Below, in pieces: positions 1-19,700 of a DNA stretch of 64,000 bases. Both the position numbers and the translations under genes were made by a program. Every line of letters begins with the position of its first letter. The first letter of the stretch is position 1. The DNA comes from Styela clava. Taxonomy: Eukaryota. The stretch covers positions 14,570,001 through 14,634,000 of the forward strand of contig NC_135262.1 in the NCBI RefSeq assembly GCF_964204865.1, written 5' to 3'. The notes beneath the pieces were generated by a model. The model was not told the origin of the DNA. It did not search any database and worked only from the letters and a program-made list of their open reading frames with translations.

Positions 1-3000
1 AGTCTGATATATCATGTCTTGGATTATTAACAACAATAATATAAGCAAGAAATATTGCTTTGAATGGTTCCAATACAAACACATTCTGAATTATTCCACT
101 CAAAAGTGATACCAACCTGAATGAAGCGAAAACAAGAAATTAGCATTGCATTCATGACTTGAACTAAGAATTTACAGAGCTTCAGCTTTCAACTCATAAA
201 CAATTCATACTTGTTTGTATCACATATTTATTACCATTGTTTAGAAATATGACTTCCATATGTCATTCCATACATCAAACTGAGCACAGAAGATCCAATG
301 ATAATAATAGTAATTAATATCCAGGCAAAATAAATACAAAACCAAGGTAATGGTTTAAAATCAACAGAATCAGGATCAACATCCATGACAGTAACAACTT
401 TTGATCGATGATGAGCTTTTCTGAAAAATGAATAAGGGATAAAACTCAGAGTTTTTTTTTTAAATTGCACTTACTGAAACGAGATGTTACCTCTTTTGTT
501 CTTGCAAATCTGCATCTCCGTGAAAACCAGCAGAAGGTAAAAGCAGTTCCCTTCCATCATATTTTATTTGTTGTTTTCTTTTTCTCTTGTTTTGATCTAA
601 ATGCTTACTTTTTCGGAGTTGAATTTTTCTGTCTTTATCAATAATTTGTATTTTGGATGATTGTTGTATTTTACTGTCTGAACATGTTATTTTCTCATAG
701 TTGCTTCTATGTGATGATGTCATACTGTGATGTCTTTTAGATTTTAAATGTCGAAATCTTGGAACACTTAAATCCATGTTATTCAGCTCTCGATGTCTCA
801 AAAGATGTCTTGAAGATGTCAATGTTCTATGACTAAACCTTCGGGATGAAATCCTTTGTTGAAGATCAAAATCTGATATTGATGATGTAATAGTGTCATA
901 GTTACTTGTGTTGCAATGGTGATATCTATGATGTTGTCGAGATTGTCGAAATATCACAGACACAATGTAGGTCGCAGGAAAACATAAAATACTACTTTCC
1001 AATCCTGAAAACAAAAGGAATATTAGTAAATCAAATAATAATTTAATAAAGTATTTTTTGTAAAACTTGTCAAATTGGACAAAACCTCCAGTGTTAGATA
1101 TAGGCTTATTTTATAGCAGTTCACATGATTAATATTTATTAGATTGTGTCTGACATCTATGACACACAGATGTGAAGCTATGTTAGAAATCATCAATGTC
1201 AGTCTGTATAAATCATCAACTCACCAATAGCAATATTTGACCATTTGAATGAATAATATCCCAGATCAATACTAAGAGAGGCTTCAAGTCCATAAAACAT
1301 GAGAGAAGTCAACATTAACATGAATATAAGGATTGAACAACAAGCAACGCGTTGAGTACGAGACATGTCATGTTGTGACCATGGACGCATCGCAAATAAT
1401 GAATACCAGAGATGTCTAAAAAATAACAGAATGCCAGATAAATTGACACAATTTAGTGCTGTAATATCAACACATGAACTCACCTGTCTTTCAAATAATT
1501 TTCACTTTTAATTGTGAACAAACTTTTAAATGAATGAAGATGTTTGATAGTGGCTGCATGAACTTCAATATCAATTTGACATTCTCCCATATGATAATCT
1601 GATAGCCAGGTATTCACAAGAAAAAACCAACATTCATTTGTTTCATAATCTCGAACAACAAGACGATCAATGTACCTGAAAAGCATTCCTCAGAAATTTC
1701 TTACCTGTTCACACATTGCTGTCTCGTATGTCGGCTAATAGGGTATTGGCAACTGGACACCAATTTCATACTACAAAGCTGATATTTAACAGTGAATTTG
1801 GAAGTTTATTAGTGTTCAGTTCAAAAAGAACTGATTTATGTGGTAATTATGCTAGCTAATGTGGACCAAGCTTGGGATGTCAGATGTAAATGAAATTTAG
1901 GAGAGCATTGTCTGTGGAACTTGGCCTAAATAATATTTACATTCTTACAGTGTTGGTGATTTCATGTTTCTCTAGTACAAGTGCTGTATAATTTAATGAA
2001 TAATTTTTTCAGCCACTTGTCAATATTGAAAATATCATACCATTCAGGACTTGTACCTTCATTACCATGCCATAATCTAACAGTAGTAATATCACCAAGA
2101 CATCCAGGTGTTGTAATAAGAAATGTAATAACACTTCCTTGTAATAAAATTCTTTCTTCTTCACATTTCTAGAAGATTATTACAATTTAATGGTTACAAT
2201 GAAAAACCGTGTGAATGTGAACAAACATAGTGATAATTTATGATAACAAAACCACAAATACATAAATATGATTATTGCTCTCTTTACATTACTTGGGAAA
2301 CTGAAACCAAACAGTAATTTTCAAAATATCAAGAACACACATGCAACTCCCCAATAATAAACAATATGACATGTTCAACATAATTTGAAAAACGAAAAAC
2401 TATATAGACTCCTAAATAGTTGGTCATTCAAAATATCAATATTTTTTTCTTCAATGATTCTTTTTGTATCTTAAAAATATCACCTACCTACCTGTAATAT
2501 ATGAACAACACCTTTATCATTTGATCCATTAATTTTAACAACAACAGTGGATGAAGGTCCAGATCTACGACGATTCCCAGTAAATATTGTAAGTAAATAT
2601 CTGTAGTGTTCATTTGGAAGATTGTCGCTCACTTCTATGTAAGAATGCTGTTTAAACATAAACAGATGATAGGCATGAGACAAGTGTATGATCACATAGA
2701 TCAGTTTTTCCCAAATTTTGTTCGGTCGCTGACCCCTGCTTTATAATCTTGTTTTTGACGGACCCACATTCTATGCCTAACAATCGAGAAAGAGTAATGT
2801 TTCATTTACATCATAAAAACATGAACGATATTAATGTGTTGAATGAGATTGCTTTCGACTGCACTATTTATCAATTGTCATAGCAATTTGTGACAAGCAA
2901 ACTCGTAGGTCCAACTCTACGGCAAGTCTCAACCTATATTTTTACATCAAATTGGTAAAAGATGAAAATGCTGCCTCACACATGTAGATTTTTTAAATTG

Positions 3001-6000
3001 CCCTCTCTGACATTAATTTTGTCAGCAAGTTTTGTCTACAACGTTCCAAAGAAAAAAAACAATGGCTTTAAATCAATCATTAGAGATCCATTAGACTTAT
3101 TTAATATCGTCGCAGACCCCCTGTGCATTCATCACGGACCCACAGGGGTCCGCAGACCCCAGTTTGGGAAACCATGACATAGATTGATTCCTTTGAAGAT
3201 ACAAAATGTTTGGCCAAATCAAAGTCACACCTCAGTAAAATATACTCACAAAATCCATATCAGTTTTATCTCTCCATCTTGCCCAAAACAAAACCGATCC
3301 AAATACTAAATACATTCCAAATACTGTTAGAAATATGATTGGATTGTCATAAAATTCCTCCCATAAATTCCAGGATACCTTAACAACAAAGTAATCTAAT
3401 GTGAAGAGCATAGGTTTATGTCAACGATTTCATGGTCATAATTTTCTGAAAAAACTATATGTAACTTGATTGAACAAAAATATTTTAAAAAAATGGCCAC
3501 AGGTCAATCGTGGTTGATCTGAGTAACATTATGTGAATTAAATACCAACAAATACTTTAGTTAAAATCAAAAGATTAATTAGGGATCTTTTGTTCAATTT
3601 CCAGAGCAGGACAACTATTACAGCAAAATGTTTCTGATGTATAGATAGGATCTATGGAAGAAACATAGCAGAAGTTAAAAAAACCAAACAACTTACCTTG
3701 GTAAAATCAATTTTATTTGGATAAACAATTAATCTTGATGAAAATAAATTTGGTGAGGAAATTTTTCTCGTTCTTGAAAATGTTTGAGAATCACATTCAC
3801 ACCAAGTCCATTTGTCTAGTGTTGAAGTCAGAGTGGCCTAGGAATAGAAAAATGTAATCAGCTGAAAAAAATTGTCCTAACTCCCAAACCAAAATGTTTT
3901 ACAATTACAAACCTTACAACCATCACTATTCCAATCATTAATCATGTCATCCCAGAATGTACACTTTGGGGCATATGTCAATATTTTGAAACTCACTGGT
4001 TGGGTAGATTGAGTCTCTATTGTTAAATTGAAAATTGTATGACCTTTCAGGATAGGTATTGTCCAAGTAAATCCACCTTGAGATGCAAATTCTGTGAGAT
4101 GATAAATTAGGGTGAATTAACTAGGTGATAACTTCCTCTGCTAACCATGTCTATGCATTTGAAATATTTACCTGGTAAGCTACAAGCAAATAACGCTGGT
4201 TCTGTGGTTCATATTATTTTTTAAGCCATATTATTGGCATTTTATTATCCAGGGATAAAAATATATAAATACTATCCTATTCAATGGCGAATCAAAAGAT
4301 GATTTCCAGACATTTTTCACAAAATAGGAAAGTAACATAAGACTTTTGACTCAACAGAGCTTTAAAGAACTATCCTTTGTTGATTATGCTTCAAGATTGT
4401 AATATATCATTTAAATTGAAGGGCCTATTTTAAACATATATCTAAATTGAAAACGAAACAAAATTTATGACTACCTGTTTCATTGACAATTTTTTCAAGT
4501 TTGAACCGATCCATTTCCAGAATGTTACTTTCTTGTAAAGTTAATTTCACTTTTGCAGCTCCCAAAACATCATTTGAAATTATTCTTATTTTCAAAGCTA
4601 CATTTTCATGAGGACCTTCCACAACAATTGGTAAAAATCCGCTCCATAAACCTTGTTTTGTTTCGTTCAATTTTACATTAAAATATTCAGGTTCAGGTTG
4701 ATGATTTAACAAACCATATTTTATTGGTTTTGTCAAGGAAAATGTTTTTGTTTCTGATTTTATTTTTCCTGGAATTTTGTGAGATTTTGACAAAGTTATT
4801 CCAACTACTTCATCTGCTTTGTTTGATTTTGTGTTAAATTTTGTGTTTGAAGAGTTGAATCTGAAAACCTGGCAAATATATTGAAATAGTTTACCAAATG
4901 TCATCCATATTACACCATCATCCTCAACCATCTAAACATATTTTTGTTACCTGTATATTCAATAATTCATTATCATCAACATCTGTCCCTTCAAAATCTC
5001 CAACTTTGATTTGTACCTCATCGTCAGCTAAAGTCAAATCTATTGAATCGAAATAGACAAATTTCAAAATGTATTTGAAATGCAAATAAATTGTTGTGTC
5101 TCAAAAATGTTGTTTCCCACTTATCGCCATTTTAATATATTTGTCCCACTTCACCACATTTGGTTCACACTTGGTTCTAAATTAGGGTGGACATATATAT
5201 CAGCGCAAATGGTTGAAGTAAGCATACATAGTGGGATTTGTGCCATGTTCTGGTTTAGTATATATATATATTATTTTGGTACAAATTTAAAGTAATCATA
5301 TAAAATTAGATTCATACAATTGGGGCACGTCATCGTTGAGACACCTCTCAATTAATTGATTTAGTAATATTCGCGGCAAGACAAATTACCATAATCTATA
5401 TTTTTTACAACACAATATAACATAAAAAAGAATAACTCACTTTCACTTTGTTTATATCGCACAATACTAGTATCCACAGATCTTGTTTTAATCTTCAATA
5501 TTTCATCTCCAGGTAGAATTGCTTCAAGCATTTCACGACTTAAATCATCAACTATTGTTGTGAGAGTTCGATGGTTGGATGTTGTAGTAACCTGGAATGT
5601 AGAACTAGGGCTATGTTTCAACTATCCCTGAATCAGTAAATCTTGACTCGAAACATAGTTTAGTAAAAATTGTGTATTCATGGAGTCTGAACCTTTGCCT
5701 GGAACTCTTTTTAAGCATAAAAAAAAATAGGAAATACTACAACAATTTTCAACATTCCAATAAATAACCAAATAACTTGTGTAGTTTTAAAATTCTTGGA
5801 TCTCACCTCACTTTCACTCATTCTCTGCATAATATTGGATGAAACAAGCAATGATGTTTTAACAACTGATGAAATAGAATCAATTGATGAATCAATATCA
5901 TTATGTATCCAGGTAGATACATCAGATAGTTTATTTATGAGGTTTGCCTAGAAAAATAAAAAATATATCAACAGGTTGAAAGCATTTGAAATTAAAATAA

Positions 6001-9000
6001 AAAGTAAATTTAAAACAAAACTCATATTTTAAGTAGTTGCCAACATCAGATGATGAGCCATACATGCACTTATAATTATCCTATTGCCTTTGAAGATTTA
6101 GAGTACATTACAGAGCAACATTAGTAGTATTTCATCAATGAAATTTTGTTTAGATTTACATTTACCTGAATAGTGTCATCCAAGCTCTTGAAATCCTCTG
6201 TTGTAACTTGCAGAACATCTGTAGTTTGTTTCACTGATTCAGTTGATGTAAAAATTGAATTCAATGCAAAATTCAATATTTTCTTTTTCTGAAATATGAA
6301 TAATATGTTTGATTGAGAAAAACATTAAGTTTGATTTATATCCTCATATCATTACTGAGATTCTTCGTCTCTAAAACGTGCATATCCAAAGAATTTGATA
6401 TGACTAAATATTCTACACAATAGATGTGTTTTGGTCGGAAGCTGAAATCACGTAAGAAATTATTTCTATGTACTCTAGAACTGCTATCTAACTTACCAAG
6501 TTCATAGAAAAATCAGGATTCTTTGATAATGATGAAACAAATTGAGCAACTTTTTGTGAATTATCGGATTTTATTGCATTTTCAAGTACTTGTTTTAAGC
6601 TCTGAGATTCTGCTGGAATTTTGCTTTTTTCTACTTGTATTGGGAATATATGATGTGAACACGAACCAGCAGAATTACATGTTTCTGCTTGTATTTGAAT
6701 GTAACCAGGTGGAAGAATTAAATCTGTCATTTGAGTTTCATAACCATATTGTAGAAGAGACGTGGATTCTAAAAAAAACATAAAATTAATAAATAAAAAA
6801 TCTACTCTACTTTTAGCTTGTTTTCCAGGTTTGCCACGAAGAGAAAATACCCAAGTTTTGTGACATTAAATATAGCAATCAGAAATCGCATATACTTCTT
6901 TAGAATATAAAAGAAAATGGCCTATTACATATATCTGATATTCTAGTACAAGTTTGTGAATCTGATTGATATTATCTGAAAGTGTAAAGTGAATGGTCAC
7001 CACCACATATTTATCTCGTGACTATGAAAATATTTTTCAATATCTTTCGAAATATTACAGTATAAGAATTACCTCCATCAATCAAAGAAAACTTGATCAT
7101 GAGTCTTTCATAAGATGAGCATGTCAAATTAAAACTTGTGATGAATCCGAATCCAGTATTAGGTTGATATGAACATTTTATTGCAGATGGAGGTTGAATA
7201 ATGTGGGTTTTGATAGTGATTGATGCATTTTGACCAACTTCATCAAAACCTTAAATAAGTAAACATTATTATTAATATCTAAAGTTTTGTCGATAAGGGG
7301 GAAATAATAATTAACAATATCACAATACCTATTCGAGGATCACTAAAATTATTCGTATATCTAAACATCAGAGATTTAATCCACATACTATGTTTAACTC
7401 ATATGACGACTGAAAATAGATGAAAGAAAAAGGTAGTTACTAATGATAACATGGGAAGCATTAAGTTCAAACTACTAATTAACCTGTAGCGGTGATAAGA
7501 ATAGCTTTTGTTGAATTGATTTGCTCTAAGGAAGTAGATTCCACTTTACAAAACTCTTTCAAATCACAATCACTCAACTTTCCAAATATTGTATTCCATT
7601 TGTATCGCACGCATGAATCACATTGGATTTGTAGAATCAAAGGTTCTTGAGGTTTCAATACTTTTTTGCAATTCACCCAACATCTGTAATGAGATATTTA
7701 ATCAGAGAACAAAACAAACAACACGAAGCAACAAATAAAAACAAGATAAAAATAATACACTCACAAAATATTCAAACTTGGAGCAGGATGTGATAAAATG
7801 AGAACTTCTTGATCAGTAAAAACATCTTCATATCCAGATAAACTAACAAATAATCTGATGTAAAATTTATTTTTTATTTTAGTTTCATCAACATTGATTT
7901 CAACTTTTGTTTGATTTCCTACAAATGATGGATTCCAACCAAAACATGATCCCTTATGTTGAAACATTCCAATATGTTTATCAACAGGTAAATCTTCAAT
8001 ATTTAAAGAGCAAAACCAGTCATATTGTTGATCTTGAATATGTGGATTCAGTGAACAAGTTCCATCAAATGATATTTGAGATGTGTTGTGGCCTAGTAAA
8101 TAGGGAATAAAATCATTCATCAAAGGCTGAAAAGCAATAGAATTCGGAATGAAGCATGAAATATGTTTAGTCCGTGTAAGAAATTCTTTCCACATAATAT
8201 GTTGACTTCATTGTTAGGAATATCATCCAAATCTTAATACAATTCATTCAGTGAGTGACAAATAGCAATACAAAAAAAAAATTCAATGGTTTCCATACCT
8301 ATTTCTCTCGATGTTCCCACACATATTTGTGCATTCAATTCAATCCTTGGTATTTTAATTGATGTAAAATCTTCAACTTGTTGAATAAGAATTCCACTGT
8401 TGCCGACTTGAGTAACAATAACTTGAATAATATAAAGTCCAGGATCAATCATCCATGGTCTGATATTAAGTTCATTTGTCTCTATCACTAAGTTTTCAAA
8501 TAGAATTTCATTTTCTGGTTTTGTTGTCAGGGTCTTCACCTATAACAAAAGTGATAGATAAGGTTGCGGGACAAGTAACATGAAATACCCTATTACAGTA
8601 AATGGAAAAACTTACAATGAGTAAGTAAGAGACAACCAATTTGATATAAATACGTTTCTAACTAAAGTCCTCATTTAATTTTTAGCAATAAATATGAGAA
8701 TTACAACTAACCTAATCGTTTCACACAATATTTAAGTATTAATAATTTATATGCCTTAGCATCAGATAACTTACTTTATATATTTTCCACTTATACTTTA
8801 TTTCATCTGTATTAGGAATGTCACATTCCATATCAATATCTGCGCTCAATAAAATCGGTGATTTTCCATGTAAACTTGATCTCACAAATGATCGAGAACT
8901 TCCATCTCGAATCTTTACTTTCCACAAGCACACAGTCGCGACAGCGCTCATTACAATAACTGATATTTCATCGCTTAAACTTTGTTTATTGTTTTCAGTT

Positions 9001-11080
9001 GTTACTTTTGCAGTTATAATGTATGTCCCAGGCTTGGTAAAGAGATGTGATGTGTTGTATATTTTATATTCAGCTGCATCGAATGGAATTTTTAATTCCG
9101 ACAATTTGCTTTCAATAATTTTGAATGTACTATGTGACGACACTTCTTTTTCTGCAATCACGTTATCATTGATCGAAACTTTTACATCAAATGTTCCACT
9201 GCTTGTAATTTTATAAAAAACAAGTATTATCGCATGATTTGTAGTGAAAATCGGCAGTGATGACGTCACATACACGTCGTGTACTAGAGGAAAACTTTCA
9301 ACAGGTCCCATCTCCGACGTCACTTCCCCCAAACTGTTATTCGCTTTCACGAAAATATCGAACATTCCTTCAAACGGAACAGACATTTCTAAAATAACCT
9401 CCCTACATTCTTGAGGATTGCTGCAAAATGCACTCGTAGTTGCTACATCTCTGTTATCTTGTTTATTTTTTAGATTAGCCTTGATAAACGCAGGACTCCC
9501 TTCATATATGAAAACTGTAACAGAAAATGTTGTCGGTTCAAGGTCAATGTATTTTATTGGTTGAATGTTTAGAATGTTGAGTTTCTCACAGAAGCATATC
9601 TTAAAGGTGTAGTTGGTAGCTGAGACATCGTTTTCTAGGACGAGGAATGCGTAATGTGCACCTGGCCCTAGTTTGTCCTGGAGTTCAATTGGAAATTGAA
9701 ATACCATGTGTATGTTGGAACGATACTGTAGAAGTTCTTCACTGTAACTAATTTTTTTAGTAAGCACATACTCACTAAGCTCAGGAAAATATAGATGATA
9801 TGTCACAGTGTAAAGGAACGGCAGATCAACAGTTAGGTTGAAGTTGTTTGTATTTGACATGCAACGTTGCAATTTCAACTTGTTTCCCAGTAAAATACTG
9901 CTGTTTACTAAATTATCGTAGACTACAAAGGTTGGATTAGCATCTATGAATCCAATGTATTTATTCTCATTCAAATAGGTCATTTGACATTGAATGAGAC
10001 ATTGCTTTTTGCCAGATTCCATAAAAAATAATTCGACAATATATGATTCCTTGGATATTTGAAATTTTTTTTTTTGATGATCCACTTGCAGAAGACAGTC
10101 ACATTCAATTTCTTCAGGAATGCTTTGAATGTAAACTTTCATATATTGCTTCTTCCCGGCAATGCCAAACTCTTTGAAAATTGTGCTTATATCTGACAAA
10201 GGAATTATGAGCTTGCAAACAGACAGTAACCTCTAAATTCATCCTACGTATTTCTGATCATATCAACACCATTCCAAATGTAATAATAGAATTTTCACGT
10301 TCACGTGAATGTTTGTTTTGTATAGATATATTGAGGCCGCCTCCTCTGAGTGCAAATAATACATTTTAGTGACCAATAGAATTCAAGAAAATTACACCGA
10401 ATAAAATTGAAACAAAATCAGAGGCTTTTGCTGCCTATATATCTTGAAAATTCGTTTGAGTGGAACGAACAAGCGATAGGTAGGAATGTCCTACAGACCT
10501 TCGACGGGAAGATTTTAAATTTGAGTAGATATCCATGTTATGATACAATTGCAATAAATCATTGCTTTTCAAAGTCAAAGTTAAAATTATAAATCGTATC
10601 AGATTTTATTTAGCACTCATTTAGTGGACAGGACTTTTAATTAGTCTGAGCCCTGAGGTACTGAGTATACTGACTATGATATATGACATATTTTATTCAC
10701 TCACTCGGGAAGACGTAGAAAAAAGCAACGCCTCGTCCGCAAGTATTCTCTACGGCGTCTACGCCATTGAAGGTCAGGGAGAGTTTTTTCGTCGAATGTA
10801 AAATGTAAGCAGTTTCTTGTTCACAAAGACTTATAGGCAATAGACCATGATGATCTACAACAAGTTGAGCCTGTGCACATCTGTATTTAATCGGTTTTAT
10901 TAATTATTGAAAAATACCCAACTTAAAAAAATGTTAATGGAGATGGAACTCACGAGGGTATGTCAAAGTCCATGAATTTTATTATCACAGGTGACTGAAC
11001 TGATGCATTAAATATCCAAACAATTGACTGTCGTCCCGAGCACTGCGGATAATTAGGCGAATAGAGATGTCCAGAACCAA
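1..11080 (-). CDS. Polycystin-1/PKD1-like (REJ-family) membrane receptor, multi-exon, 3'-truncated by the window edge; putative s-Themis-like sperm allorecognition receptor
   Basis: Hand-spliced, phase-consistent GT-AG exons (5'->3'): 11080-10954, 10880-10705, 10192-8775, 8539-8299, 8092-7765, 7683-7484, 7249-7073, 6768-6497, 6288-6166, 5947-5807, 5591-5441, 5039-4951, 4868-4475, 4091-3913, 3837-3697, 3378-3250, 2647-2492, 2168-2041, 1675-1484, 1415-1225, 1004-491, 420-235, 116-<1. Motifs: CUB (SGHLYSPNYP..W..KFMDFDI); REJ (ISFDGTCSLNP, CWVNC..PLILQIQCDSC, QPP..KCSYQPNTGFGFITSFNLTC); GPS (CTFWD..WNSDGC..CEC); TM1 (NPIIFLTVFGMYLVFGSVLFWARWRDK); PLAT (YLLTIFTGNRRRSG, LGDITTVRLWHGNEGTSPEWYIDRLVVRD, WFFLVNTWL); polycystin HLWYS..SRTQRVACC and LPW..LEPFK segments. 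Confidence 0.93.
2702..3176. mobile_element. Non-autonomous hAT-type MITE in the PKD1-like TM1-PLAT intron
   Basis: TIRs cagtttttcccaaa / tttgggaaaccatg; perfect 8-bp TSD ACATAGAT (2694-2701 and 3177-3184). Confidence 0.88.
8775..10192 (-). CDS. Large (1418-nt) extracellular exon of the PKD1-like gene; beta-rich PKD/Ig-like repeats leading into REJ
   Basis: 486-aa ORF containing PKD-like strings (EGMFDIFVKANNSLG, HLFTKPGTYIITAKVT, VLENDVSATN) and ending YKWKIYK|gtaagt. Confidence 0.9.
10705..11080 (-). CDS. Two exons encoding a CUB domain at the N-terminus of the PKD1-like protein (absent from the ORF track)
   Basis: Exon 11080-10954 (ttcag|..|gtgagt, phase 1->2) plus exon 10880-10705 (tacag|..|gtgagt, phase 2->1) give GSGHLYSPNYPQCSGRQSIVWIFNASVQSPVIIKFMDFDIPSCAQAQLVVDHHGLLPISLCEQETAYILHSTKKLSLTFNGVDAVENTCGRGVAFFYVFP. 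The phase-1 end fits the acceptor cctttgtcag| before 10192. Confidence 0.88.
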
Positions 11081-11138
11081 CTGAAATTTTTTTTTCTGCA
11101 GATATATAAAATACTTAAAATACGTGATTGCTGAAGGG

Positions 11139-12410
11139 ATGATTAGAAATACAGCAACGTTTTTGGTGATTATATTTATAGTTCCGTTCGCTATATGCCA
11201 ATGGAAAAACGCCGCCCTGGGAGACGATTCCTCCCACATTACATTCACCGCTTTAAAAGATCAAATAACATTAATGCTTCATCTTGTGGTGGATCTTGAA
11301 AAAGTTATTATAGAGTCTAAAGAGAGAAATAACGCAACGAATCAGCTTGAAATATCAATAATTCATTCGAATGGAGATGTATTTAACGGTATGTTGCTTT
11401 CAGTATTCTGAGTACTATACGTAGACCCAAATCTAATTTTTTGAACCAATTTAAAACTAGGCATAACAATAATCGGGCACACAAAGCTGTCTACATAAAA
11501 TTGTTTTAGATGAGATACAATATAATCCTAAAAATAGATTGGAACATGGATATGTAGCCGTCATTGCGGATTATTAAATGTACACTATTTGCGTAAAAAT
11601 ACCCGAGCTACATATGTGTAAAAGGCTACACCAGTATTTCACGAAGAAGATTTATATAAATGCTGTCCCCTTGCTCCAACGCGTGTTTCTGGAGAGTGAT
11701 AATCGTACACATTTTTGCATTAAGATTGCAACGAAATATTCAACAAGGGATACACGCAATCCGGTGTATATATGATTCAGATTTTTCATGGCTTTTATCA
11801 AATGCCTATATTTTGTGACATGCAGCTACCTGGAGTATTTTCGGGAAAAAGAGGCTGGATGACAATTCAAACAAGAATGAACGGAGAAGTCAATTTTGAT
11901 CGTAGCTGGAATGACTATTTACATGGTTTTGGGTTTCCAGATAGAGAGCATTGGATAGGTCTCCGAAATATTTTGAGAATTACGAAACAAAAGAGAGTCG
12001 GGAAATTTGGTATCAGAAATTTAGCCTTCCGCATTGATGTGGAAGACTGGGACGGTGTTACTGGATTCATGGAGCATAGTGATTTCAGCATGTTATCAGA
12101 AGAGTTCGATTTTGAAATATCAGATCTTGGACAATTCAGCGGAACCCGTGGCCTCGGTAGTCACCTAGGCTTCAACGCTCATAAGCCATTCAGTACGTAC
12201 GATCATAATAATGATCGCAGGCGAAATGAAGCATGCGTCAAATCCCAGAGAGGTGGATGGTGGTATGGTTTTTGTAGCCATACAAATCTTAACGGAGTTT
12301 ACTCTGCGCGCAGAGAAAAAATGACAGAAGAAAAAATATTTATCCGAAATTGGGGAAATGTCAATCCCAGAAATACCGCATTTCGATATGTTTCCATAAA
12401 GCTTCAATGA
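11139..12410 (+). CDS. Secreted fibrinogen-related-domain (FReD) protein, 311 aa, two exons; putative v-Themis-like vitelline-coat ligand nested antisense in the PKD1-like gene
   Basis: Exon 1, 11139-11388: signal peptide MIRNTATFLVIIFIVPFAIC, a short helical stretch, donor G|gtatgt. Exon 2, 11725-12410: acceptor tttttgcattaag|. Total 936 nt in frame; the junction reads FNDCNEIFNKGYTQSGVYMI. FReD motifs FCDM, GWMTIQTRMNGEVNFDRSWNDYLHGFG, EHWIGL, FSTYDHNND, GGWWYGFCSHTNLNG. AATAAA near 12445. Confidence 0.92.
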
Positions 12411-12542
12411 ACGATTTTTTGTACTCAATGTTTCTAGATGCTTAAATAAATAAGGATCATTCCTTCCAATAACATATTGCAATATGGGCAATTTCTCATA
12501 TTAAAAAATGAGAAAATTTTAATTCATAATCCAACAGCACAC

Positions 12543-12632
12543 CAGACTTCGACACCGATGCGTGTAATACGAAAGGCAGATAAGATAAAGTGGACAAATT
12601 ATAATTAAAAAAAGAACTAAAAAGGCAAACAT
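12543..12632 (-). CDS. Candidate signal-peptide first coding exon of the PKD1-like gene
   Basis: ATG at 12632 opens MFAFLVLFLIIICPLYLICLSYYTHRCRSL, a hydrophobic signal-peptide-like sequence just beyond the FReD poly(A) signal on the opposite strand. The donor is unresolved: a phase-1 A|gtctgg after 12548 would join the CUB exon directly; a phase-0 CTG|gtgtgc after 12543 would need an extra exon. Confidence 0.5.
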
Positions 12633-13066
12633 TTGGAATATAACACTACAAAAGTCTGTTTATTTTTAGACCATTTCGTGGTGTAATGTAACGTGCATCA
12701 CATTAGAATGTGCAGTAAGTGAGACTCTTTGTTATTCTATTTTTTCGCTATAAACTATTGGAAGTATCAATTTTGTCTCTCGTGTATTTCGAACAATCAA
12801 AAGTGGCGACCTTAAAGCTGAGCTGAGTTCAGGGTTGACTCAACGTAAACCTGAAGTAGCGCGTACAGAATTAATTTAGAATCTATCGAATTCTATGAAA
12901 TCGTATTAACGTATTGCTATAATTTTTCATTTACAAAGTTGATTGTCAAGGGAATGCGCACGGTGACAGTATTTATATTTTGGAAATACCATTGTATGCT
13001 TGTGACGAACACTGTCATTTATACTCCTACTTGTTCCCAAGTACGCGCTCCCACGACTATCTAAAC

Positions 13067-13732
13067 AAAGGTGGTCCAAGGTTGTCGGTCTCGCGGGCCA
13101 CACTATAATTTTTGTGTTGTTCGCGGGCCACAATAATGCCAAGAATAGGTAAACAGTGCCTTAAGGAGAAAATGCCGTTTTAGTTTGTCACCGACACAAC
13201 TTGCAGACATATTAAGCAAGCATTGTGGTATTTTCCCTCTCATATCCAGTCAAAAATCTGTTTGAATTCGTCAGATTTTTTTTCAAACTCATGTTTACAA
13301 AATAACTGAAGATTTATTGATTACCGATTTTTACCAAATTTGAGATACACGAGGGCAATTACTAAATTTTCTGACATATATAGGCAGCATTTTTTTGTAA
13401 TACTGTTTAGGCTGGTTGCAAAAAAACACCCGACAGGAATTATATTGGTCAGTCATTACATTATTATTTAGTTATCAGGCATAGTGTCAACCTAGGCTAA
13501 TAGATTCTTCATTCGATTTTTAGTTTTCTATGAAGTTTATATTGTTAGCAAACATTCCCGACCGAAAATATAAAAACCAGTTAAAAATTAAGACTTGCCA
13601 AGCACATCATTTAACTTTGCTAATTGTCTCAGATGGCCATAACACTAGTCAATTCAGTGACAGCGACGCGGGCCATAAAAAATGAAGCGACGGGCCACAT
13701 GTGGCCCGCGGGCCTGGGTTTGGACCATCCTG
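13067..13732. mobile_element. Non-autonomous hAT (Charlie-like) element
   Basis: Imperfect TIRs aaaggtggtccaa / ttggaccatcctg, subterminal GCGGGCCAC repeats, perfect TSD ATCTAAAC. Confidence 0.88.
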
Positions 13733-13962
13733 ATCTAAACTAATAAGCTACTGTGTATATATATTTAAATATAAAGGAGTTAATAAAGATACTTGCGATA
13801 TTTGCCCAATCGTTCAAAAGTATCTGAACGACTTGACGGCGGTCAGAAATAAAGCCAAACAAAAAAATTGTATAGAATAATACGTACTTATATTTCCAGC
13901 TTATGCGCCAGAGCGAAACTTCAACCGCGCTATCATTTTGAGTTGTTAATAATGGTCTGATC

Positions 13963-14453
13963 CATCGTTTCTCAAACCTCTTTTGCCCCGGAACACCTAC
14001 GTCTTTTATCTCGCTTCGCGGAACACCAAGAAATGAGGTCAAATTGATAATAAAAAAATTGTGTAATGGATTTGAACCGACTTATCACGAAATCTTTTGA
14101 GGATTTCAGTTTTAGGCAATCCAACAATCCATTGAAAGAAGGGTGAATTTAGCCTATGGTAAAATTGAAAAGTTTGCTGCAAACTTTTTAATTAAAAAAT
14201 TAGGTAGACGGTAAGTAACGATATTGAACGATTGACGAAAATGCCACGCTTACCAGACTGGCACCAGGCCTGTCCGCCTGTTTGTCGTCAGTTGAGAGAC
14301 AAATTTACGACACAGGAGCGCCAATGTGCGACCGAGATTGCCATGGTGACCAATTTTTTCGCAAATTTTGATCTCTGCCCGGCGGAACACTCCAAAGACC
14401 AAAGTAGCTCGCGGAACAACAGTGTTCCGCGGAACACAGTTTGAGAGACGCTG
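13963..14453. mobile_element. Non-autonomous hAT MITE
   Basis: TIRs catcgtttctcaaac / gtttgagagacgctg, subterminal CGGAACAC repeats, TSD GTCTGATC/GTCTAATC. Confidence 0.85.
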
Positions 14454-14533
14454 GTCTAATCACCGAGCTAGCGTATATTACGAACCAAGTCGGGAATCCC
14501 TAATTTATACGAATGGGTTGATGTATTAAGGGC

Positions 14534-14720
14534 GGTTCCATTACATTTGAACCCACGTACATTTGAACCCATGACAATTGCACCTGTATGCTATTGCACC
14601 TATGAAATTTTTTTTGTTTCACGGATAGTTAAACCCATACTAACCCTAGCCCATGGGTTTTAGCACCCGCATATAGATTGAACCCGTGGGTATACGCATG
14701 GGTTCAAATGTACGGTCACC
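14534..14720. mobile_element. Small Mutator-like MITE
   Basis: GG...CC ends, inverted tacatttgaaccca repeats, 9-bp flanking repeat ATTAAGGGC/ATCAAGGGC. Confidence 0.7.
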
Positions 14721-15469
14721 ATCAAGGGCATGACGCAGGAACGCCATGCCGTTTGATAGTGCCTTCGAGACCTTATTCATTAAAAACCCATCCTACGCGC
14801 AAAAAGAAAAGTGATGTAAAATTTTTTTTTAACATTAGCTCTTATGGGGAATGTGATCACCAGAGCAGAAATTTGCATTTTTGGTAATTTTCTAGATATC
14901 TTTCATTGTATACGTGAGCAGTTATGAGGATAGAATATTTTTTACATCTTCTTTAATATTTTTATCATGATAAACATGGTCAAGATTTTTGATAATCGTT
15001 CATTAAAATTTCAATGAGAGCGGTGTTTCCGATGATGTCATTCTCACTAGACTATGAAATTCTGCCAACGCGCCGTGCTCTGTGGGATATGTGCTGCAAA
15101 TGCGGCGCTAATGTCGCTTTGGGTCCGGTACTGGAAGCATTCAACATTGACAATCTATAACCCATACCATTTCTATCACGTTTGTTTACTGGTTTTACGC
15201 ATTTATACCTGTACAGCTAGCAATCATTTACTGAAGGCATGCTGACGTGTTATTTAAACTACCGGTACCGTACCAAGGCTGCAAGAGGTGAAAACTAAAT
15301 TATTTAGTCCAAATAGGCTACTGAAATAGGCCTACGAACAAAAATGTTGGCCATCCTGCCAATAGGCAGGATAAGTTTTACGATACCGGTATACAAAAAA
15401 GATGAATATCTCCAACCTACAATGGTACAATACCGGTCTCCTAACTAGGTTAAAAAACATGACTGAATA

Positions 15470-16200
15470 CGAGAGGGAGATTTATTTTGTCAACCAGAAT
15501 ACAAGCATTGAATCAATAAAAATTATATACAAAACACACAGTTATTCAGTATAGACTGGGGGAGCGATACGACCATCACTGTCAGCTCCCCCCTGCCCCA
15601 CATGTTTGCTATCAAGATTAACAGTTAATTAAGATGTTTGAACAATTTAACAAAAACTCCTTGGAGGAAGAGTTGACTAAGTTACAGAATATTTTTAGAT
15701 TCGGTTAAAAATGTAGTCCATTATTAAACCACTGCTTTTTTTTGCAGATTTTCACTTAGTGGATACTTAGCAAGTACGACAGTTAATTTATAAAAAAAAT
15801 TGTAAACAAATAACAAATCAGTAGCAGTCAGCTCGGGTATTCAAACATGTGATGATTGAAGTGAGAAAAAAATTTGAAGTCACATTTAGGATACATTAAA
15901 CAATTAGGATTACATTAAACAACAATGGGAAAGGTACATTGGAATCAGTCAAGCTTCAAATGCTAATGGCATTTATGAAAAGAATATGCGAAATGAAGAC
16001 TGAAGTTTCCATCTGGGACATTGGAAGACGCTAAAACCTCATAGTCTAGACTTGATAGTGTGGAAAGCCTTCTCACAATGCAGAAATAATGGGACATATA
16101 TTTATAATATCAATATACAGGCTTTAAATTGAACTATATGTTTGAATAAAATATCTATCTTTGCAAATAAATGCTGAAAACCATTTATTTCACTCTGCTG
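15470..16200 (-). mobile_element. Decayed LINE (CR1/L2-like) 3' end
   Basis: Degenerate ORF2-end-like peptide (HILFINAISI*SL), GC stem-loop ggggagc...gctcccc at 15558-15593, AATAAA near the end; boundaries approximate. Confidence 0.45.
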
Positions 16201-16238
16201 AGTGATTAGGGCCAGAAATTTGCTGTAGGGACCATCAC

Positions 16239-16721
16239 CAGGGCTGGATTTACCAATAGGCTAGGCAGGATGAAACCTAGAGCCTCGAAATTCGGTTTCG
16301 AAGTTTGTAATTCTTTTGAAAACTTGACAAGTTTGAACCCTACAAAAAGTAGCCTATATATATATATCAAGCTTTTCAGAGTAGAAAATTCTGTACCTAA
16401 CTGGTTTCAACCACATTGTAAACAGTCATTATTGCGTCGTTTGCATCATAATAAGGGAAATTATTATTATGCGCATTCTGCTGGAAGTTTCTATGTTAAA
16501 GTATGGCTGTAGCGGTTGTTTGATCAAAGAAATTGAAAGTAAAACTTCCTCAAGTAAATTTTTATTCTTTTAATTAAAAATTTACACCCATGAATGGGGA
16601 GAATAAAAAGTTAAATGCTTTCATATTTTTAAATTTTAAGCAATTAAATGTGGTGTTGTTTAGAGGGAAATTCTGAGCTCAAAAATATGAAGGGGCCTCT
16701 CATGGTCTAAATCCAGCCCTG
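16239..16721. mobile_element. hAT-type MITE nested in the long-TIR element
   Basis: Perfect 14-bp TIR cagggctggattta / taaatccagccctg; TSD ACCATCAC/AACATCAC. Confidence 0.88.
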
Positions 16722-19700
16722 AACATCACCAATTTGGGATAGGTACATGGTGTCAACATATGAACCGAGTTAGGCCATTGGATTATGGAATTCATGAAAT
16801 ATATAACATCCAATTAAAACCAAAATAGGTCTTTCGTTGAACGCCAGTTGTGGTCCCGGTACCGGTATACCAGTATTCTGTTATCACAAGCAGTTGGAGC
16901 GCATAACCCACAGAGCACGGCGCGTTGGCAGAATCTCATGGTCTAGTGAGAATGACGTCATCGGAAACACCGCGCTCATTAAAATTTCAATGAACGATTA
17001 TCAAAAATCTTGACCATGTTTATCATAATAAAAATATCAAAAAAGATGTAGAAAATATTCTTTCCTCAAAACTGCTCACGTATACAATGAAAGATATCTA
17101 GAAAATTACATAAAATTCAAATTTCTGCTCTGGTGATCACATTCCCCATAAGAGCTCATGTTAAATATTTTTTTTTTACATCACTTTTCTTTTTGCGCGT
17201 AGGATGGGTTTTTAATGAATAAGGTCTATTTCGCAATGAAGTTTTACTTTCATTTTCAGGGTCAGATTAGACGCAATTATATAAGCCAGGCATGCTCTCC
17301 AATGATTAACTTTAACTAAAACAAGTGAAATTAACTGTTGCCCCCAAGCGCACAAATACGTTTGCAAATAAGCTTTTATTCTATTAGGGGGGGTATATAA
17401 ATTATAAAAACATAAATCGAAAAGCTGATTACGTTGTAAACCTGACAAAATCCCTGGACACCTGAATACAGGGATGGTGATTGCATGAGTCGAATTCTTG
17501 ATTTAAATTGGCCGTACAAAGATATAACGTTACGTACCAACATTGATGTATTCTTTACTGCGGCCGGATGGAATTCCAGAGATGATGGCAATTACCGTCG
17601 ATAATAACATTATTGTCTCAGATAAAGGCATGACTAAAATCATTACAAAAATACAAATTAGGTTGGTTATTATTCTGTGCTCAGCGAGTCAGACTAAAAT
17701 GGGCGTTCTGTGACATTTGCTTTCGTCCATTGCCCTAGCATAGACTAGAAAAGTTTGATCGCTTAGTGTTTGCTTTGCTGTTGACATACTATATTGAATA
17801 TTGGACAATATCCAATTCTCTGTATCAAGGGTCTGCTAAAGCCAATGGGTTCAATATTTTCTGAGCGCTTCTTTGTGTCAGAGCATAACTCGAACTTGGA
17901 ACTTCCTGTATGAATGGGACTAGCCTATTGGTACAACTCGATGAGTTAGTTAGCTAGCATATATTCGTTTACAAACTAACTAGTAATGAGCTGACTTGAT
18001 CGCAATATGATATACAATAATTGTTCTACAATTTTTTTCAAGTACCGGTACAATCGTAAATATATACTCATACTATTGCTAAACAAGAGCTAGTGTTCGA
18101 CAACATTTATAGATTGACCTTGCTGGACATACAAAATGTCGTTTATTGCGTCACCTTGGCGTAAGGGAATTTTCGTACAATTGTGATATCACTATCACCG
18201 AAACACATAGAACAAAATCAGTAAGATCGTAGTTCATAAGAATTCATACTAGGAGCCATCGTTGCAAGGGGCGATGCGTGAATATATTGTTTCGTGCCAT
18301 ATATGCAAGGTAATCGTAATACACTATAATATAAATGTTGTAGTACTAGAGATATTATTTCCATTGGAACAAAATTTGGTCAAGGTGAAATGAACTTATT
18401 TGGGTATTCCTAGTATAGAGATGGCATATGGAACCATAATACTGGTAGAATGCTCAAAATCATGAAAATTATATCTTGTCCAGTTACAACTTTTAAAACT
18501 ATTAACATAACTCGAAGGTTGGCAAATTGTTAGGAAATGCGGATTCGCAGGCCGGGTAATGCCAAATATATGCGCGACAATTGTTGGATTATCTGCCGGG
18601 TGGCTCACATGATCACTGATGGAATAGCGCATTCTACAGCCCATGTTGTATATGTATCTATTGATTTGCTGATCAGATAGATCGAACCTCAGTGTATGCT
18701 TCGTCATGATTAAATATTTGACGGACGGTTATTTTTTGACAGTGGCAGTGGCACAAGGTTACAACGTGACCCTGGATAATCAATTGCACGTTTCTGAATT
18801 GTTTGTTTATTATATAGCATGAGATGTTAAAATTATTCCAGAATCATTTGCCTTAAAAATATTTGATAGCGCTAAAACAAACGTTGTTGATTGTATGTAC
18901 GAACTATGTCTAATCATGAAGTATTGGCAATCATTATGTATGACTTCCCGTATCTGATCTGGTAAAAACTTGGTATGGCTATATCTGAACGAGAGACCAA
19001 TTTAGAAAATTAATCAATATACATTCAAAGGCCGTCATGTTGCATATGAATGATTATTTGCAAGTGTTGTAACACCTTTTCTATGTATCCTGACAAATAC
19101 AGGTGTCGCATAAGGGGGTGACTGAAATATCTGGCTGTTCTTTGATTCTTGGAAAACTATTCGAAAACGCGCAACTCTCAGTGTGTCCTCCAATGCCACA
19201 AATATCAAAAGATGTTGTTCAATGAAATTTGATATATTGAAATAAATTCAGTAAAACAGTTCACAATGTTGAATGAGGTTAAAGAGGTGTAGCAAAGGCA
19301 GTGATGCGAATGTAGCGTAATGATCCAAATGTTGCGGTTTTCTGAATTTAAATAAAGATATTCAAATACAGATCATGTGAAACAATAATGCATTGAAGCA
19401 CTTGCAATCTTAAATTATCAATTAAAGTGAATATTATGCAGACACTAACAAGTAATGTTGATCACAAATTATTATCAGACCAACGCAGCACTATGAGGAA
19501 AATATTACCATAACCAGTAATGTAAAACAAAAGTTAGAATCTTACCGAAACTTTTTGAGCCAGGCAATAACAAATTTAACTTCAGAATATATAGAAATAA
19601 ATTTTTTAATTTCAGTTCAGGAATCAAGCAAATTATAGTTTATTTCTAGCTTACTTAAAATTCTACAATAAAAGTTACAGCAGTTATATGCTCCAATAAA

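What the first reader, a model, noticed from the sequence alone, without database searches (positions are those of the whole stretch)
1..12632. Putative gamete self/non-self recognition locus: polycystin-1-like receptor with a fibrinogen-like gene nested antisense in its 5' intron (s-Themis/v-Themis architecture)
Seen: the most 5' securely assigned exon of the minus-strand PKD1-like gene (11080-10954) is internal, with a phase-1 acceptor and no start codon, and begins only 58 nt from the ATG of the plus-strand FReD gene. A signal-peptide-like minus-strand ORF starts at 12632, just past the FReD 3' end. The FReD gene therefore appears to fill almost all of a ~1.5-kb intron of the receptor. Known: in Ciona, self-sterility is governed by linked pairs of sperm s-Themis (PKD1-like: hypervariable N-terminus, REJ, GPS, LH2/PLAT, TMs) and vitelline-coat v-Themis (fibrinogen-like), with v-Themis encoded antisense in the first intron of s-Themis. 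Inference: this is a homologous or analogous receptor-ligand self-incompatibility haplotype, probably unannotated as such in this species, with nesting keeping receptor and ligand alleles together.
Basis: partly seen in the sequence, partly recalled or inferred. Interest (0 to 1): 0.95.

Follow-up and report, generated by a model that had tools for sequence, protein, structure and literature searches.

The report
Styela clava Themis-type sperm/egg gene pair
This sea-squirt (Styela clava) locus holds a sperm-type polycystin receptor gene with a fibrinogen-like gene sitting backwards inside its first intron, which is the same layout, and for the receptor the same gene family, as the Ciona s-Themis/v-Themis genes that stop self-fertilisation; whether it does that job in this species is untested.

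Summary
The window is Styela clava, chromosome piece C17. The minus-strand PKD1/PKDREJ-like gene (NCBI model, 2444/2557 aa) threads exactly onto the genome. Exon 1 is 17643-17538 (signal peptide, phase-1 donor) and exon 2 is 11095-10954 (CUB-like). Intron 1 is 6.4 kb, not 1.5 kb. It holds the plus-strand fibrinogen-domain (FReD) gene (CDS 11139-12410) plus repeats. The 12632 ORF lies in the FReD 3'UTR and is not a receptor exon.

One RNA run holds the spliced FReD mRNA and a spliced receptor contig. The receptor aligns colinearly (about 29% identity over about 1950 aa) with Ciona "self-incompatibility-linked PKD1-A" (s-Themis-A), and its divergent first ~300 residues match Ciona's hypervariable region.

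The genome has at least four such pairs:
- C17: two pairs with a channel domain.
- C18: two or three pairs without one.

FReD proteins from an older S. clava annotation have no near-identical copy here (best 57-73%), which suggests extreme polymorphism.

Ciona v-Themis sequences were not reached. Tissue expression and any link to self-sterility are untested. Themis pairs are already reported in reviews for Halocynthia and C. savignyi, so this is a new member of a known kind.

The parts
17538..17643 (-). Receptor coding exon 1: ATG at 17643, signal peptide, ends in phase 1 with donor GT at 17537-17536 (G|GTACGT).
   Evidence: tblastn of NCBI model P0016/P0041 at 100%. Sequence read. Exact threading of the protein with GT/AG introns.
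11096..17537 (-). Receptor intron 1 (6442 nt). It holds the whole FReD gene antisense, plus high-copy repeats at 12900-14699.
   Evidence: No other ORF with a Pfam hit lies in 12411-17537.
11067..11389 (+). FReD gene exon 1: 5'UTR reaching at least 11067, ATG at 11139, signal peptide and a variable N-terminal stretch. The UTR overlaps receptor exon 2 on the opposite strand.
   Evidence: X1 RNA contig record 7 covers 11067-11387 joined to 11724-12717 with 0 mismatches. P0001 model.
11725..12717 (+). FReD gene exon 2: the whole fibrinogen C-terminal domain, stop at 12408-12410, 3'UTR to at least 12717.
   Evidence: Pfam Fibrinogen_C E 4e-33 for the exon and 1.1e-38 for P0001. Spliced RNA contig.
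12522..12632 (-). It is not a receptor exon and lies antisense within the FReD 3'UTR.
   Evidence: ORF seen. It is covered by the unbroken FReD contig 11724-12717 and is absent from the model that threads exactly.
10954..11095 (-). Receptor exon 2: first half of a CUB-like domain, with a phase-1 acceptor. An alternative AG would give a start at 11080.
   Evidence: Pfam CUB E 5.9e-4, 20.6 bits, just under the cut-off. Threading. X1 receptor contig ends at about 11095.
10705..10880 (-). Receptor exon 3: second half of the CUB-like domain.
   Evidence: X1 depth is on the exon and zero in the flanking intron.
8775..10192 (-). Receptor exon 4 (1418 nt): N-terminal ectodomain with a weak PKD-domain match. 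Its first ~174 codons (10192-9672) belong to the hypervariable block.
   Evidence: Pfam PKD E 2.5e-4. phmmer hits only tunicate relatives, including the Ciona s-Themis-A cluster. Boundary at 9671.
9672..12410 (.). Hypervariable cassette: FReD coding region, CUB exons and the start of exon 4. It has no nucleotide similarity to the neighbouring paralogous pair, except 66% over FReD exon 2. Everything left of 9671 is 77-94% identical, introns included.
   Evidence: blastn of pair 1 against pair 2. Amino-acid identities are 41-58% in the cassette against 75-97% elsewhere.
6497..8539 (-). Receptor exons 5-9: REJ domain (protein residues 601-1007, starting in the tail of exon 4).
   Evidence: Pfam REJ E 4e-32 on P0016. 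Exon map.
3697..4091 (-). Receptor exons 15-16: GPS motif region (residues 1361-1396). The first TM follows in exon 17 (3250-3378).
   Evidence: Pfam GPS E 0.006 on P0016 and 0.019 on the exon. Exon map.
1484..2647 (-). Receptor exons 18-20: PLAT/LH2 domain (residues 1486-1593).
   Evidence: Pfam PLAT E 8.4e-13. Exon map.
1..1415 (-). Receptor exons 21-24: transmembrane region. The gene continues left of the window for about 5.4 kb and encodes Polycystin_dom and PKD_channel there.

Best explanation
Window 1-17643 holds one Styela clava member of the ascidian s-Themis/v-Themis gene-pair family.

Gene layout:
- The minus-strand gene encodes a PKD1/PKDREJ-like receptor-channel. Its domains run: signal peptide, CUB-like tip, PKD-like ectodomain, REJ, GPS, PLAT/LH2, 11 TM with a polycystin channel. 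This is the 'B-type' build.
- A secreted fibrinogen-domain protein gene lies antisense in its first intron. Its ATG is 43 nt from receptor exon 2.
- The ligand gene and the receptor's first ~300 codons form one ~3-kb hypervariable block, so they are inherited together.

Inferred mechanism, by homology with Ciona:
- The FReD protein sits on the egg vitelline coat and the receptor on sperm.
- When a sperm meets the FReD variant encoded by its own haplotype, the receptor-channel lets Ca2+ in and the sperm detaches or stops. This blocks self-fertilisation.

What is shown: gene structures, nesting, transcription and splicing of both genes, receptor homology to s-Themis-A, recurrence of the pairing, and the concentrated divergence.

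What is inferred: cell types, binding, Ca2+ signalling and the self-sterility role.

My odds: 0.85 that this is a Themis-family pair by descent; about 0.55 that it acts in self/non-self gamete recognition in S. clava.
For: Gene models and transcription:
- Species and models: the FReD ORF is 100% identical to an NCBI S. clava protein. The receptor model P0016/P0041 threads 100% onto the genome with canonical introns, exon 1 at 17643-17538 and exon 2 at 11095-10954.
- RNA: run X1 has a spliced FReD contig (11067-11387 + 11724-12717, 0 mismatches). It also has a receptor contig whose listed piece covers 10192-9439 and whose remaining 319 nt fit exons 3+2 (176+142 nt). X1 depth is zero in the intron bins 10300-10699. 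The two contigs meet as a k=31 graph branch exactly at the exon-2 acceptor.
- Domains: REJ, GPS, PLAT, Polycystin_dom and PKD_channel.

Homology to Ciona s-Themis-A:
- P0041 residues 38-1977 align to Ciona 'self-incompatibility-linked PKD protein-1A' residues 27-1983 at 28.7% identity and 763 bits. The amphioxus PKD1-like protein gives 300 bits.
- Pfam domain positions are nearly the same in both proteins.
- The N-terminal exon finds only 25 proteins among 1.84 billion representatives, and the long hits that were looked up are tunicate or amphioxus proteins.
- Ciona s-Themis-A alleles are 53-61% identical over residues 1-300 and 83-97% after. S. clava pair 1 against pair 2 is 41-58% up to about residue 315 and 75-97% after, with a sharp nucleotide boundary at 9671.

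Recurrence of the pairing:
- Four receptor/FReD pairs share the same head-to-head layout, two on C17 and two on C18. There is also a fifth divergent receptor with FReD fragments upstream and a lone FReD pseudogene.
- C17 receptors carry the channel and C18 receptors do not. This is the same A/B distinction as in Ciona (PMC7018956).

Polymorphism:
- S. clava FReDs from an older annotation have no near-identical copy in this genome. P0002 has 70%, P0011 has 73% and P0064 has 57% as their best match.
- P0001 and P0002 are sister sequences with 99/98 support.
- Thirteen C17-type FReDs are all 43-66% identical pairwise.
- Run X2 holds a third version of 8771-9049, although the assembly has only two copies.
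Against: - Ciona v-Themis proteins were not reached, so FReD orthology rests on position only.
- In the N-terminal-exon tree, S. clava, Ciona and Clavelina receptors each form species-specific clades. No one-to-one orthology to Themis-A, -B or -B2 is shown, and the A/B-type split may have arisen independently.
- Allelism of the divergent FReDs is inferred, not mapped. The nine Logan transcripts have no species label.
- Pair 4 is nearly the same in the two annotations: FReD 98%, receptor tip 94%.
- The reference haplotype is found unchanged in an independent 2018 run, X1.
- The exon 1-exon 2 junction itself was not seen in reads, because the stretch limit was shorter than the intron.
- The tissue of the RNA sample is unknown.
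- In the other stolidobranch studied, H. roretzi, self-sterility is attributed mainly to HrVC70 (PMC7018956).
- I found no paper stating that S. clava is self-sterile.
- The complex prediction gave no answer.
Confidence: 0.6

Rival explanations
1. This is a Themis-family pair by descent, but it works in general sperm-egg coat binding or sperm activation, or in species recognition. It would then resemble suREJ/PKDREJ with an egg-coat ligand, or the non-polymorphic Ci-v-Themis-like protein. Self-sterility in stolidobranchs would be run by other molecules such as VC70.
For: - H. roretzi self-sterility is ascribed to HrVC70, and the role of its Themis pairs is unknown (PMC7018956, PMC8849226).
- Pair 4 is almost identical in two individuals.
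- The identical pair-1 haplotype occurs in two unrelated runs.
- Rapid divergence is also typical of gamete-recognition genes under sexual selection.
Against: - Within-species divergence of 30-50% between FReD forms, with no shared copy between two S. clava annotations, is far beyond ordinary gamete-protein polymorphism.
- Tight nesting of ligand and receptor tip in one block, kept in every pair, is what a self-recognition haplotype needs and a species-recognition pair does not.
Confidence: 0.25
2. This is a somatic or immune pairing. The FReD would be a secreted lectin of the ficolin/FREP type and the PKD1-like protein a mechanosensory or other somatic receptor. High diversity would reflect pathogen-driven or tissue allorecognition selection, not fertilisation.
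For: - FReD families are greatly expanded and diverse in tunicates. NCBI names the protein MFAP4-like.
- The tissue of the expressing sample is unknown.
Against: - The receptor's closest named relative is the sperm protein s-Themis-A, not a somatic PKD1.
- P0001 has no collagen-like stalk.
- Two of the three S. clava RNA-like runs laid show neither gene, which argues against broad somatic expression. This is weak evidence.
- The nested layout matches the gamete system exactly.
Confidence: 0.08
3. This is incidental nesting. The FReD gene merely happens to lie in a long first intron, with no functional coupling to the host gene.
For: - Nested genes are common in animal genomes.
- Intron 1 is 6.4 kb and mostly repeats, so the FReD does not fill it.
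Against: - The same orientation and close spacing recur in at least four paralogous pairs on two chromosomes, and in Ciona. The FReD ATG lies about 35-43 nt from receptor exon 2 in both C17 pairs (PMC7018956).
- The divergent block spans both genes with a sharp common boundary.
Confidence: 0.05

Closest known systems
Ciona intestinalis type A (C. robusta) s-Themis-A / v-Themis-A (NCBI: self-incompatibility-linked polycystic kidney disease protein-1A)
   Same: - The receptor aligns colinearly over about 1950 residues, with REJ, GPS and PLAT at nearly the same positions.
- The first ~300 residues are the divergent part in both.
- A fibrinogen-like gene lies in the first intron in the opposite direction (PMC7018956).
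   Different: - Identity is only about 29%.
- The window's receptor carries Polycystin_dom and PKD_channel (11-TM type), which s-Themis-A lacks.
- There is no one-to-one orthology in the tree.
- The function is genetically proven in Ciona and untested here.
Ciona s-Themis-B/B2 and v-Themis-B/B2 (locus B, chromosome 7q)
   Same: - The receptor build is 11-TM with a C-terminal PKD channel.
- Two neighbouring pairs share near-identical conserved regions but have very different HVR and ligand genes, like C17 pair 1 and pair 2 (PMC7018956).
   Different: - The Ciona B sequences were not identified here, so similarity is by architecture only.
- The S. clava pairs are convergent, with 3' ends 1.3 kb apart and HVRs about 35 kb apart. 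In Ciona, B and B2 lie about 70 kb apart.
Halocynthia roretzi and Ciona savignyi s/v-Themis homologous gene pairs (mentioned in reviews)
   Same: - H. roretzi is in the same order as Styela (Stolidobranchia).
- 'At least four' pairs with substantial polymorphism are reported (PMC9265791). This is the same order of number as the four to five pairs found here.
   Different: - Only brief review statements exist, with no sequences or coordinates available here for comparison.
- S. clava pairs are not mentioned in any paper of the searched library.
PKDREJ / sea-urchin suREJ sperm polycystin-1 family
   Same: REJ-GPS-PLAT-TM architecture; a sperm receptor for egg coat or jelly; fast-evolving ectodomain (PMC7018956 discussion).
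   Different: No nested ligand gene and no paired FReD partner. These proteins are not known to act in self-recognition.
Papaver PrpS/PrsS self-incompatibility pair (analogy only)
   Same: Tightly linked polymorphic male and female determinants; self-recognition triggers Ca2+ influx in the male gamete (PMC9265791).
   Different: Unrelated proteins in a different kingdom. This is an analogy of logic, not homology.

Membership tests
s-Themis/v-Themis gene pair (ascidian self-sterility locus) | The receptor is PKD1/PKDREJ-like with REJ, GPS and LH2/PLAT domains and 5 or 11 TM segments (B-type adds a PKD channel). | tested here: met
   Pfam on P0016: REJ 4e-32, GPS 0.006 (weak), PLAT 8.4e-13, Polycystin_dom 1.1e-30, PKD_channel 4e-11.
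s-Themis/v-Themis gene pair (ascidian self-sterility locus) | The receptor is a specific sequence relative of Ciona s-Themis rather than of generic PKD1-like proteins. | tested here: met
   - Colinear alignment to the protein named self-incompatibility-linked PKD1-A gives 763 bits, against 300 bits for amphioxus PKD1-like.
- The N-terminal exon hits only tunicate relatives, plus weak amphioxus and PKD-repeat matches, among 1.84 billion representatives.
- No tree was made with other S. clava or vertebrate PKD1L proteins.
s-Themis/v-Themis gene pair (ascidian self-sterility locus) | [quoted passage not shown] | tested here: met
   - Exon 1 is at 17643-17538 and exon 2 at 11095-10954. The FReD gene at 11067-12717 lies on the other strand.
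- The junction is taken from the NCBI model and contig geometry, not from a read across it.
s-Themis/v-Themis gene pair (ascidian self-sterility locus) | The N-terminal ~300 residues of the receptor are hypervariable and the rest is conserved. | tested here: inconclusive
   - The pattern is met between the neighbouring paralogues: 41-58% against 75-97%, with the boundary at window 9671. It matches the Ciona allele profile.
- Allelic comparison in S. clava is limited to variant contigs in X1 and X2.
s-Themis/v-Themis gene pair (ascidian self-sterility locus) | The FReD protein is a sequence relative of v-Themis. | tested here: inconclusive
   A profile search returned S. clava, Clavelina, amphioxus and vertebrate FReDs but no Ciona protein. 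The word-based search may simply not reach them.
s-Themis/v-Themis gene pair (ascidian self-sterility locus) | The FReD gene is multi-allelic and highly polymorphic among individuals. | tested here: inconclusive
   - Three FReDs of an older S. clava annotation have best matches of only 57-73% in this genome.
- P0001 and P0002 are sisters.
- Pair 4 is 98% the same.
- Allelism has not been mapped.
s-Themis/v-Themis gene pair (ascidian self-sterility locus) | The receptor is expressed in testis or sperm; the FReD is expressed in ovary and present on the vitelline coat. | not testable with these tools
   Both mRNAs are present and spliced in one RNA run of unknown tissue. Two other RNA-like runs show neither.
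s-Themis/v-Themis gene pair (ascidian self-sterility locus) | Haplotype matching blocks fertilisation, and knock-out permits selfing. | not testable with these tools
   Needs crosses and genome editing. I found no paper on self-sterility of S. clava.
Ficolin / MFAP4-type lectins (the NCBI name for the FReD gene) | A collagen-like stalk (ficolin) or an RGD-bearing short N-terminus with a somatic matrix role (MFAP4), in front of the FReD domain. | tested here: not met
   - P0001 has a signal peptide, about 60 variable residues without Gly-X-Y repeats, then the FReD domain.
- The 'MFAP4-like' name is an automatic similarity label.

The most novel reading that the evidence does not exclude
The Themis system predates the split of the two main ascidian lineages. 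S. clava keeps it as two chromosomal clusters: channel-bearing pairs on C17 and channel-less pairs on C18, each cluster built of convergent inverted pairs. A ~3-kb cassette (ligand gene + CUB-like tip + first part of the ectodomain) is the specificity unit, and its alleles differ by 30-50% in protein sequence. This would make S. clava a second, genome-ready model for animal self-incompatibility and would point to the CUB-like tip as the part that reads the FReD.
Probability: 0.45. Interest if true: 0.7.

Novelty: new member of a known kind. Interest (0 to 1): 0.55.

Why it matters
Animal self-incompatibility is understood at gene level only in Ciona. For other ascidians there are only brief review statements that Themis-like pairs exist.

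This work gives exact coordinates, exon structures and copy layout for four to five pairs in a stolidobranch with a chromosome-level genome. It shows that the divergent block spans the ligand gene and the receptor tip. It also shows both channel-bearing and channel-less receptor types.

This allows several direct tests:
- whether the Themis mechanism is ancestral in ascidians;
- which residues carry specificity;
- how duplicated pairs and gene conversion shape an animal S-locus.

It is also relevant to how an invasive hermaphrodite avoids, or tolerates, selfing.

Tried and rejected
- Exon 1 of the paralogous pairs could not be found by nucleotide or peptide similarity. Nesting in pairs 2-4 rests on internal CUB exons with acceptors and no start codon or signal peptide, with the FReD gene directly upstream.
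- Read laying allows at most 6000 letters, which is shorter than intron 1. Runs X8 and X11 showed neither gene.
- A profile search for Ciona v-Themis found none. The ESM Atlas gave only generic FReD clusters.
- Complex prediction on receptor residues 36-620 with FReD residues 22-311 gave no answer (score 0.00). This is neither for nor against binding.
- Logan FReD transcripts carry no accession or species label.
- No second pair lies inside the window. Rfam found nothing. Long ORFs right of 17.7 kb have no Pfam hit, except one ephrin exon.
- Literature searches for self-sterility of S. clava found nothing usable.
- No self-joined spliced sequence was sent to any search tool. Searches used single exons by reference or proteins returned by the tools. 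The joined-model search step was left out.

Full report
**Identity of the window.** The 212-aa ORF at 11772-12410 (+) is a fibrinogen C-terminal domain (Pfam E 4e-33). It is 100% identical to an NCBI protein of Styela clava, P0001 (311 aa, 'microfibril-associated glycoprotein 4-like'), on a 20.3-Mb contig. The window is G000:C17:14570001-14634000. S. clava is a solitary stolidobranch ascidian.

**The FReD gene.**
- By P0001 and the sequence, the gene has two coding exons: 11139-11389 (signal peptide plus about 60 variable residues) and 11725-12410 (the whole FReD domain).
- In run X1, a 1315-nt contig lies on 11067-11387 and 11724-12717 with no mismatch. X1 is therefore RNA, and the gene is transcribed and spliced as annotated.
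- Its 5'UTR reaches at least 11067 and its 3'UTR at least 12717.

**The receptor gene.**
- Exon-wise Pfam scans give a weak CUB match (10953-11114), PKD, REJ pieces, GPS and PLAT, in that order on the minus strand.
- A phmmer search with the 486-aa exon found the NCBI model P0016 (2444 aa; isoform P0041, 2557 aa).
- The model threads residue for residue onto the genome with GT/AG introns, in 34 or 35 coding exons. Exon 1 is 17643-17538, exon 2 is 11095-10954, exon 3 is 10880-10705 and exon 4 is 10192-8775. The last exons lie about 5.4 kb left of the window.
- Exon 1 starts with ATG, encodes a signal peptide, and ends in phase 1 at a consensus donor G|GTACGT. This fits the phase-1 acceptor of exon 2.
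- Pfam on the whole protein gives REJ 601-1007, GPS 1361-1396, PLAT 1486-1593, Polycystin_dom 2069-2260 and PKD_channel 2267-2437.

**The nesting.**
- Intron 1 is 17537-11096 (6442 nt). The FReD gene lies in it on the other strand, with its ATG 43 nt from exon 2. The FReD 5'UTR overlaps exon 2 antisense.
- In X1, a 1073-nt receptor contig has its listed piece on 10192-9439. Its remaining 319 nt equal exons 3+2 (176+142). X1 depth is zero in the intron bins 10300-10699.
- That contig stops at about 11095, and the FReD contig starts at 11067, which is 11096 minus 30 plus 1. This is what a k=31 graph does at a branch. It indicates molecules that run straight across 11095/11096 and others that leave there. 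I take this as indirect support for splicing at 11095.
- The stretch 12900-14699 is high-copy repeat in all runs.

**Relation to Themis.**
- The best Ciona hit of the N-terminal exon, P0025, is 56% identical over 620 residues to proteins that NCBI and UniRef name 'self-incompatibility-linked polycystic kidney disease protein-1A' (P0060, P0061). That is s-Themis-A.
- P0041 residues 38-1977 align with P0061 residues 27-1983 at 28.7% identity and 763 bits. The amphioxus PKD1-like protein gives 300 bits.
- Pfam domain positions in P0060 (REJ 564-981, GPS 1332-1364, PLAT 1466-1565) nearly coincide with those of P0016.
- The two Ciona s-Themis-A forms are 53-61% identical in residues 1-300 and 83-97% afterwards. 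This locates the published hypervariable region.
[quoted passage not shown] It also states that A-type receptors have 5 TM and no channel, and B-type have 11 TM and a PKD channel (PMC7018956, PMC8849226).

**The pairing recurs in the genome.** Own-genome searches found the following.
- On C17:
  - Pair 1 is the window.
  - Pair 2 has its FReD (P0062) with ATG at 14546877 (-). Its receptor (+) runs from a CUB exon at about 14546906 to 14563244.
  - A FReD pseudogene lies at 14532069-14532742.
- On C18:
  - Pair 4 has its FReD (-) at 10502459-10503874 and its receptor (+) at 10505626-10516817.
  - Pair 3 has its receptor (-) at 10536539-10526072 and its FReD (P0063, +) at 10537053-10538133.
  - A fifth, more divergent receptor runs from its CUB exon at about 10477370 to 10495115, with FReD fragments upstream.
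- In each cluster the two receptors converge.
- Every CUB exon is preceded by an acceptor, with no in-frame start codon followed by a signal peptide. In both C17 pairs the FReD ATG is about 35-43 nt from it.
- C17 receptors have the channel region. C18 receptors end at about residue 1971 without it.

**Where the divergence lies.**
- Pair 1 against pair 2 gives 41-58% amino-acid identity over the CUB-like domain and exon 4, and 75-97% afterwards.
- At nucleotide level there is no detectable similarity from 9672 to 11724. FReD exon 2 is 66% identical. From 9671 leftwards identity is 77-94%, introns included.
- The ligand gene and the receptor's first ~315 codons therefore form one ~3-kb block. 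Its boundary is at the same protein position as the Ciona HVR boundary.
- C18 pairs 3 and 4 show the same trend more weakly.

**Signs of polymorphism.**
- Three S. clava FReDs from an older annotation have no near-identical copy in this genome. P0002 has 70% as its best match (to the window gene), P0011 has 73% (to the pseudogene) and P0064 has 57%.
- P0065 matches pair 4 at 98%.
- P0001 and P0002 are sister sequences with 99/98 support inside a star-like clade. In that clade, 13 C17-type sequences are all 43-66% identical pairwise.
- Nine of those 13 are unlabelled Logan transcripts, so their species is unknown.
- In exon 4, run X2 (DNA-like; identical to the reference elsewhere) holds a third version of 8771-9049. 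Its letters differ from both assembly copies, and the assembly has only two copies.
- Run X1 shows at least four versions of 8946-9339.
- These observations fit deeply divergent haplotypes but do not prove allelism.

**Limits.**
- In the N-terminal-exon tree, the five S. clava receptors form one clade (SH-aLRT 97). Ciona and Clavelina receptors form their own clades. There is no one-to-one orthology with Themis-A, -B or -B2, and the channel/no-channel split may be independent or blurred by fast evolution.
- Ciona v-Themis was not reached by the profile search. The search did find many Clavelina FReDs on the same chromosomes as the Clavelina receptors.
- Tissue specificity, protein binding (one search gave no answer) and any link to self-sterility are untested.
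- I found no paper on self-sterility in S. clava. S. plicata is listed as self-sterile (PMC9265791).
- No self-joined spliced model was sent to a search tool.

**Novelty.** Reviews state that s/v-Themis homologous pairs exist in H. roretzi ('at least four', with substantial polymorphism) and in C. savignyi, with unknown roles (PMC8849226, PMC9265791). No paper in the searched library links Themis with Styela clava. This is therefore a new, well-resolved member of a known kind, and the added layout details are new.

**Verdict.** I put 0.85 on this being a Themis-family pair, about 0.55 on a self/non-self role, and score interest at 0.55.

Noticed in passing
window 48926-49201 (+): An open frame with a Pfam Ephrin match (E 9.8e-8), probably one exon of an ephrin-like gene far to the right of the finding.
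   Followed up: no
window 12900-14699: High-copy repeats inside receptor intron 1. Summed contig depth is hundreds to thousands of times the single-copy level in all four runs, with many internal joints and strand switches.
   Followed up: no
G000:C17:14532069-14532742 (L007): A lone FReD pseudogene of the same subfamily, with an in-frame stop and frame breaks and no receptor gene within 20 kb. An intact relative (P0011, 73%) exists in an older S. clava annotation, so this copy may be intact in other haplotypes.
   Followed up: partly
G000:C18:10471831-10495115 (L020, L011, L012): A fifth, much more divergent receptor (25% identity in the N-terminal exon, with a CUB-like exon at about 10477370). 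FReD-like fragments with introns lie 4-6 kb upstream on the opposite strand. This may be an older or decaying pair.
   Followed up: partly
Ciona proteins P0059 and P0025 (not in the window): These two proteins look like alleles of a second channel-less s-Themis-like gene. P0059 is on the same 10.19-Mb contig as s-Themis-A (P0061). The two are 47-52% identical in the first 300 residues and 76-95% after, the same profile as the s-Themis-A alleles. I could not tell whether this gene is one of the published Themis genes.
   Followed up: partly
window 11067-11095: The FReD 5'UTR and receptor exon 2 overlap on opposite strands by at least 29 nt. The two mRNAs are therefore partly complementary, and the FReD promoter must lie within the receptor's exon 2 / intron 2 region.
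   Followed up: partly
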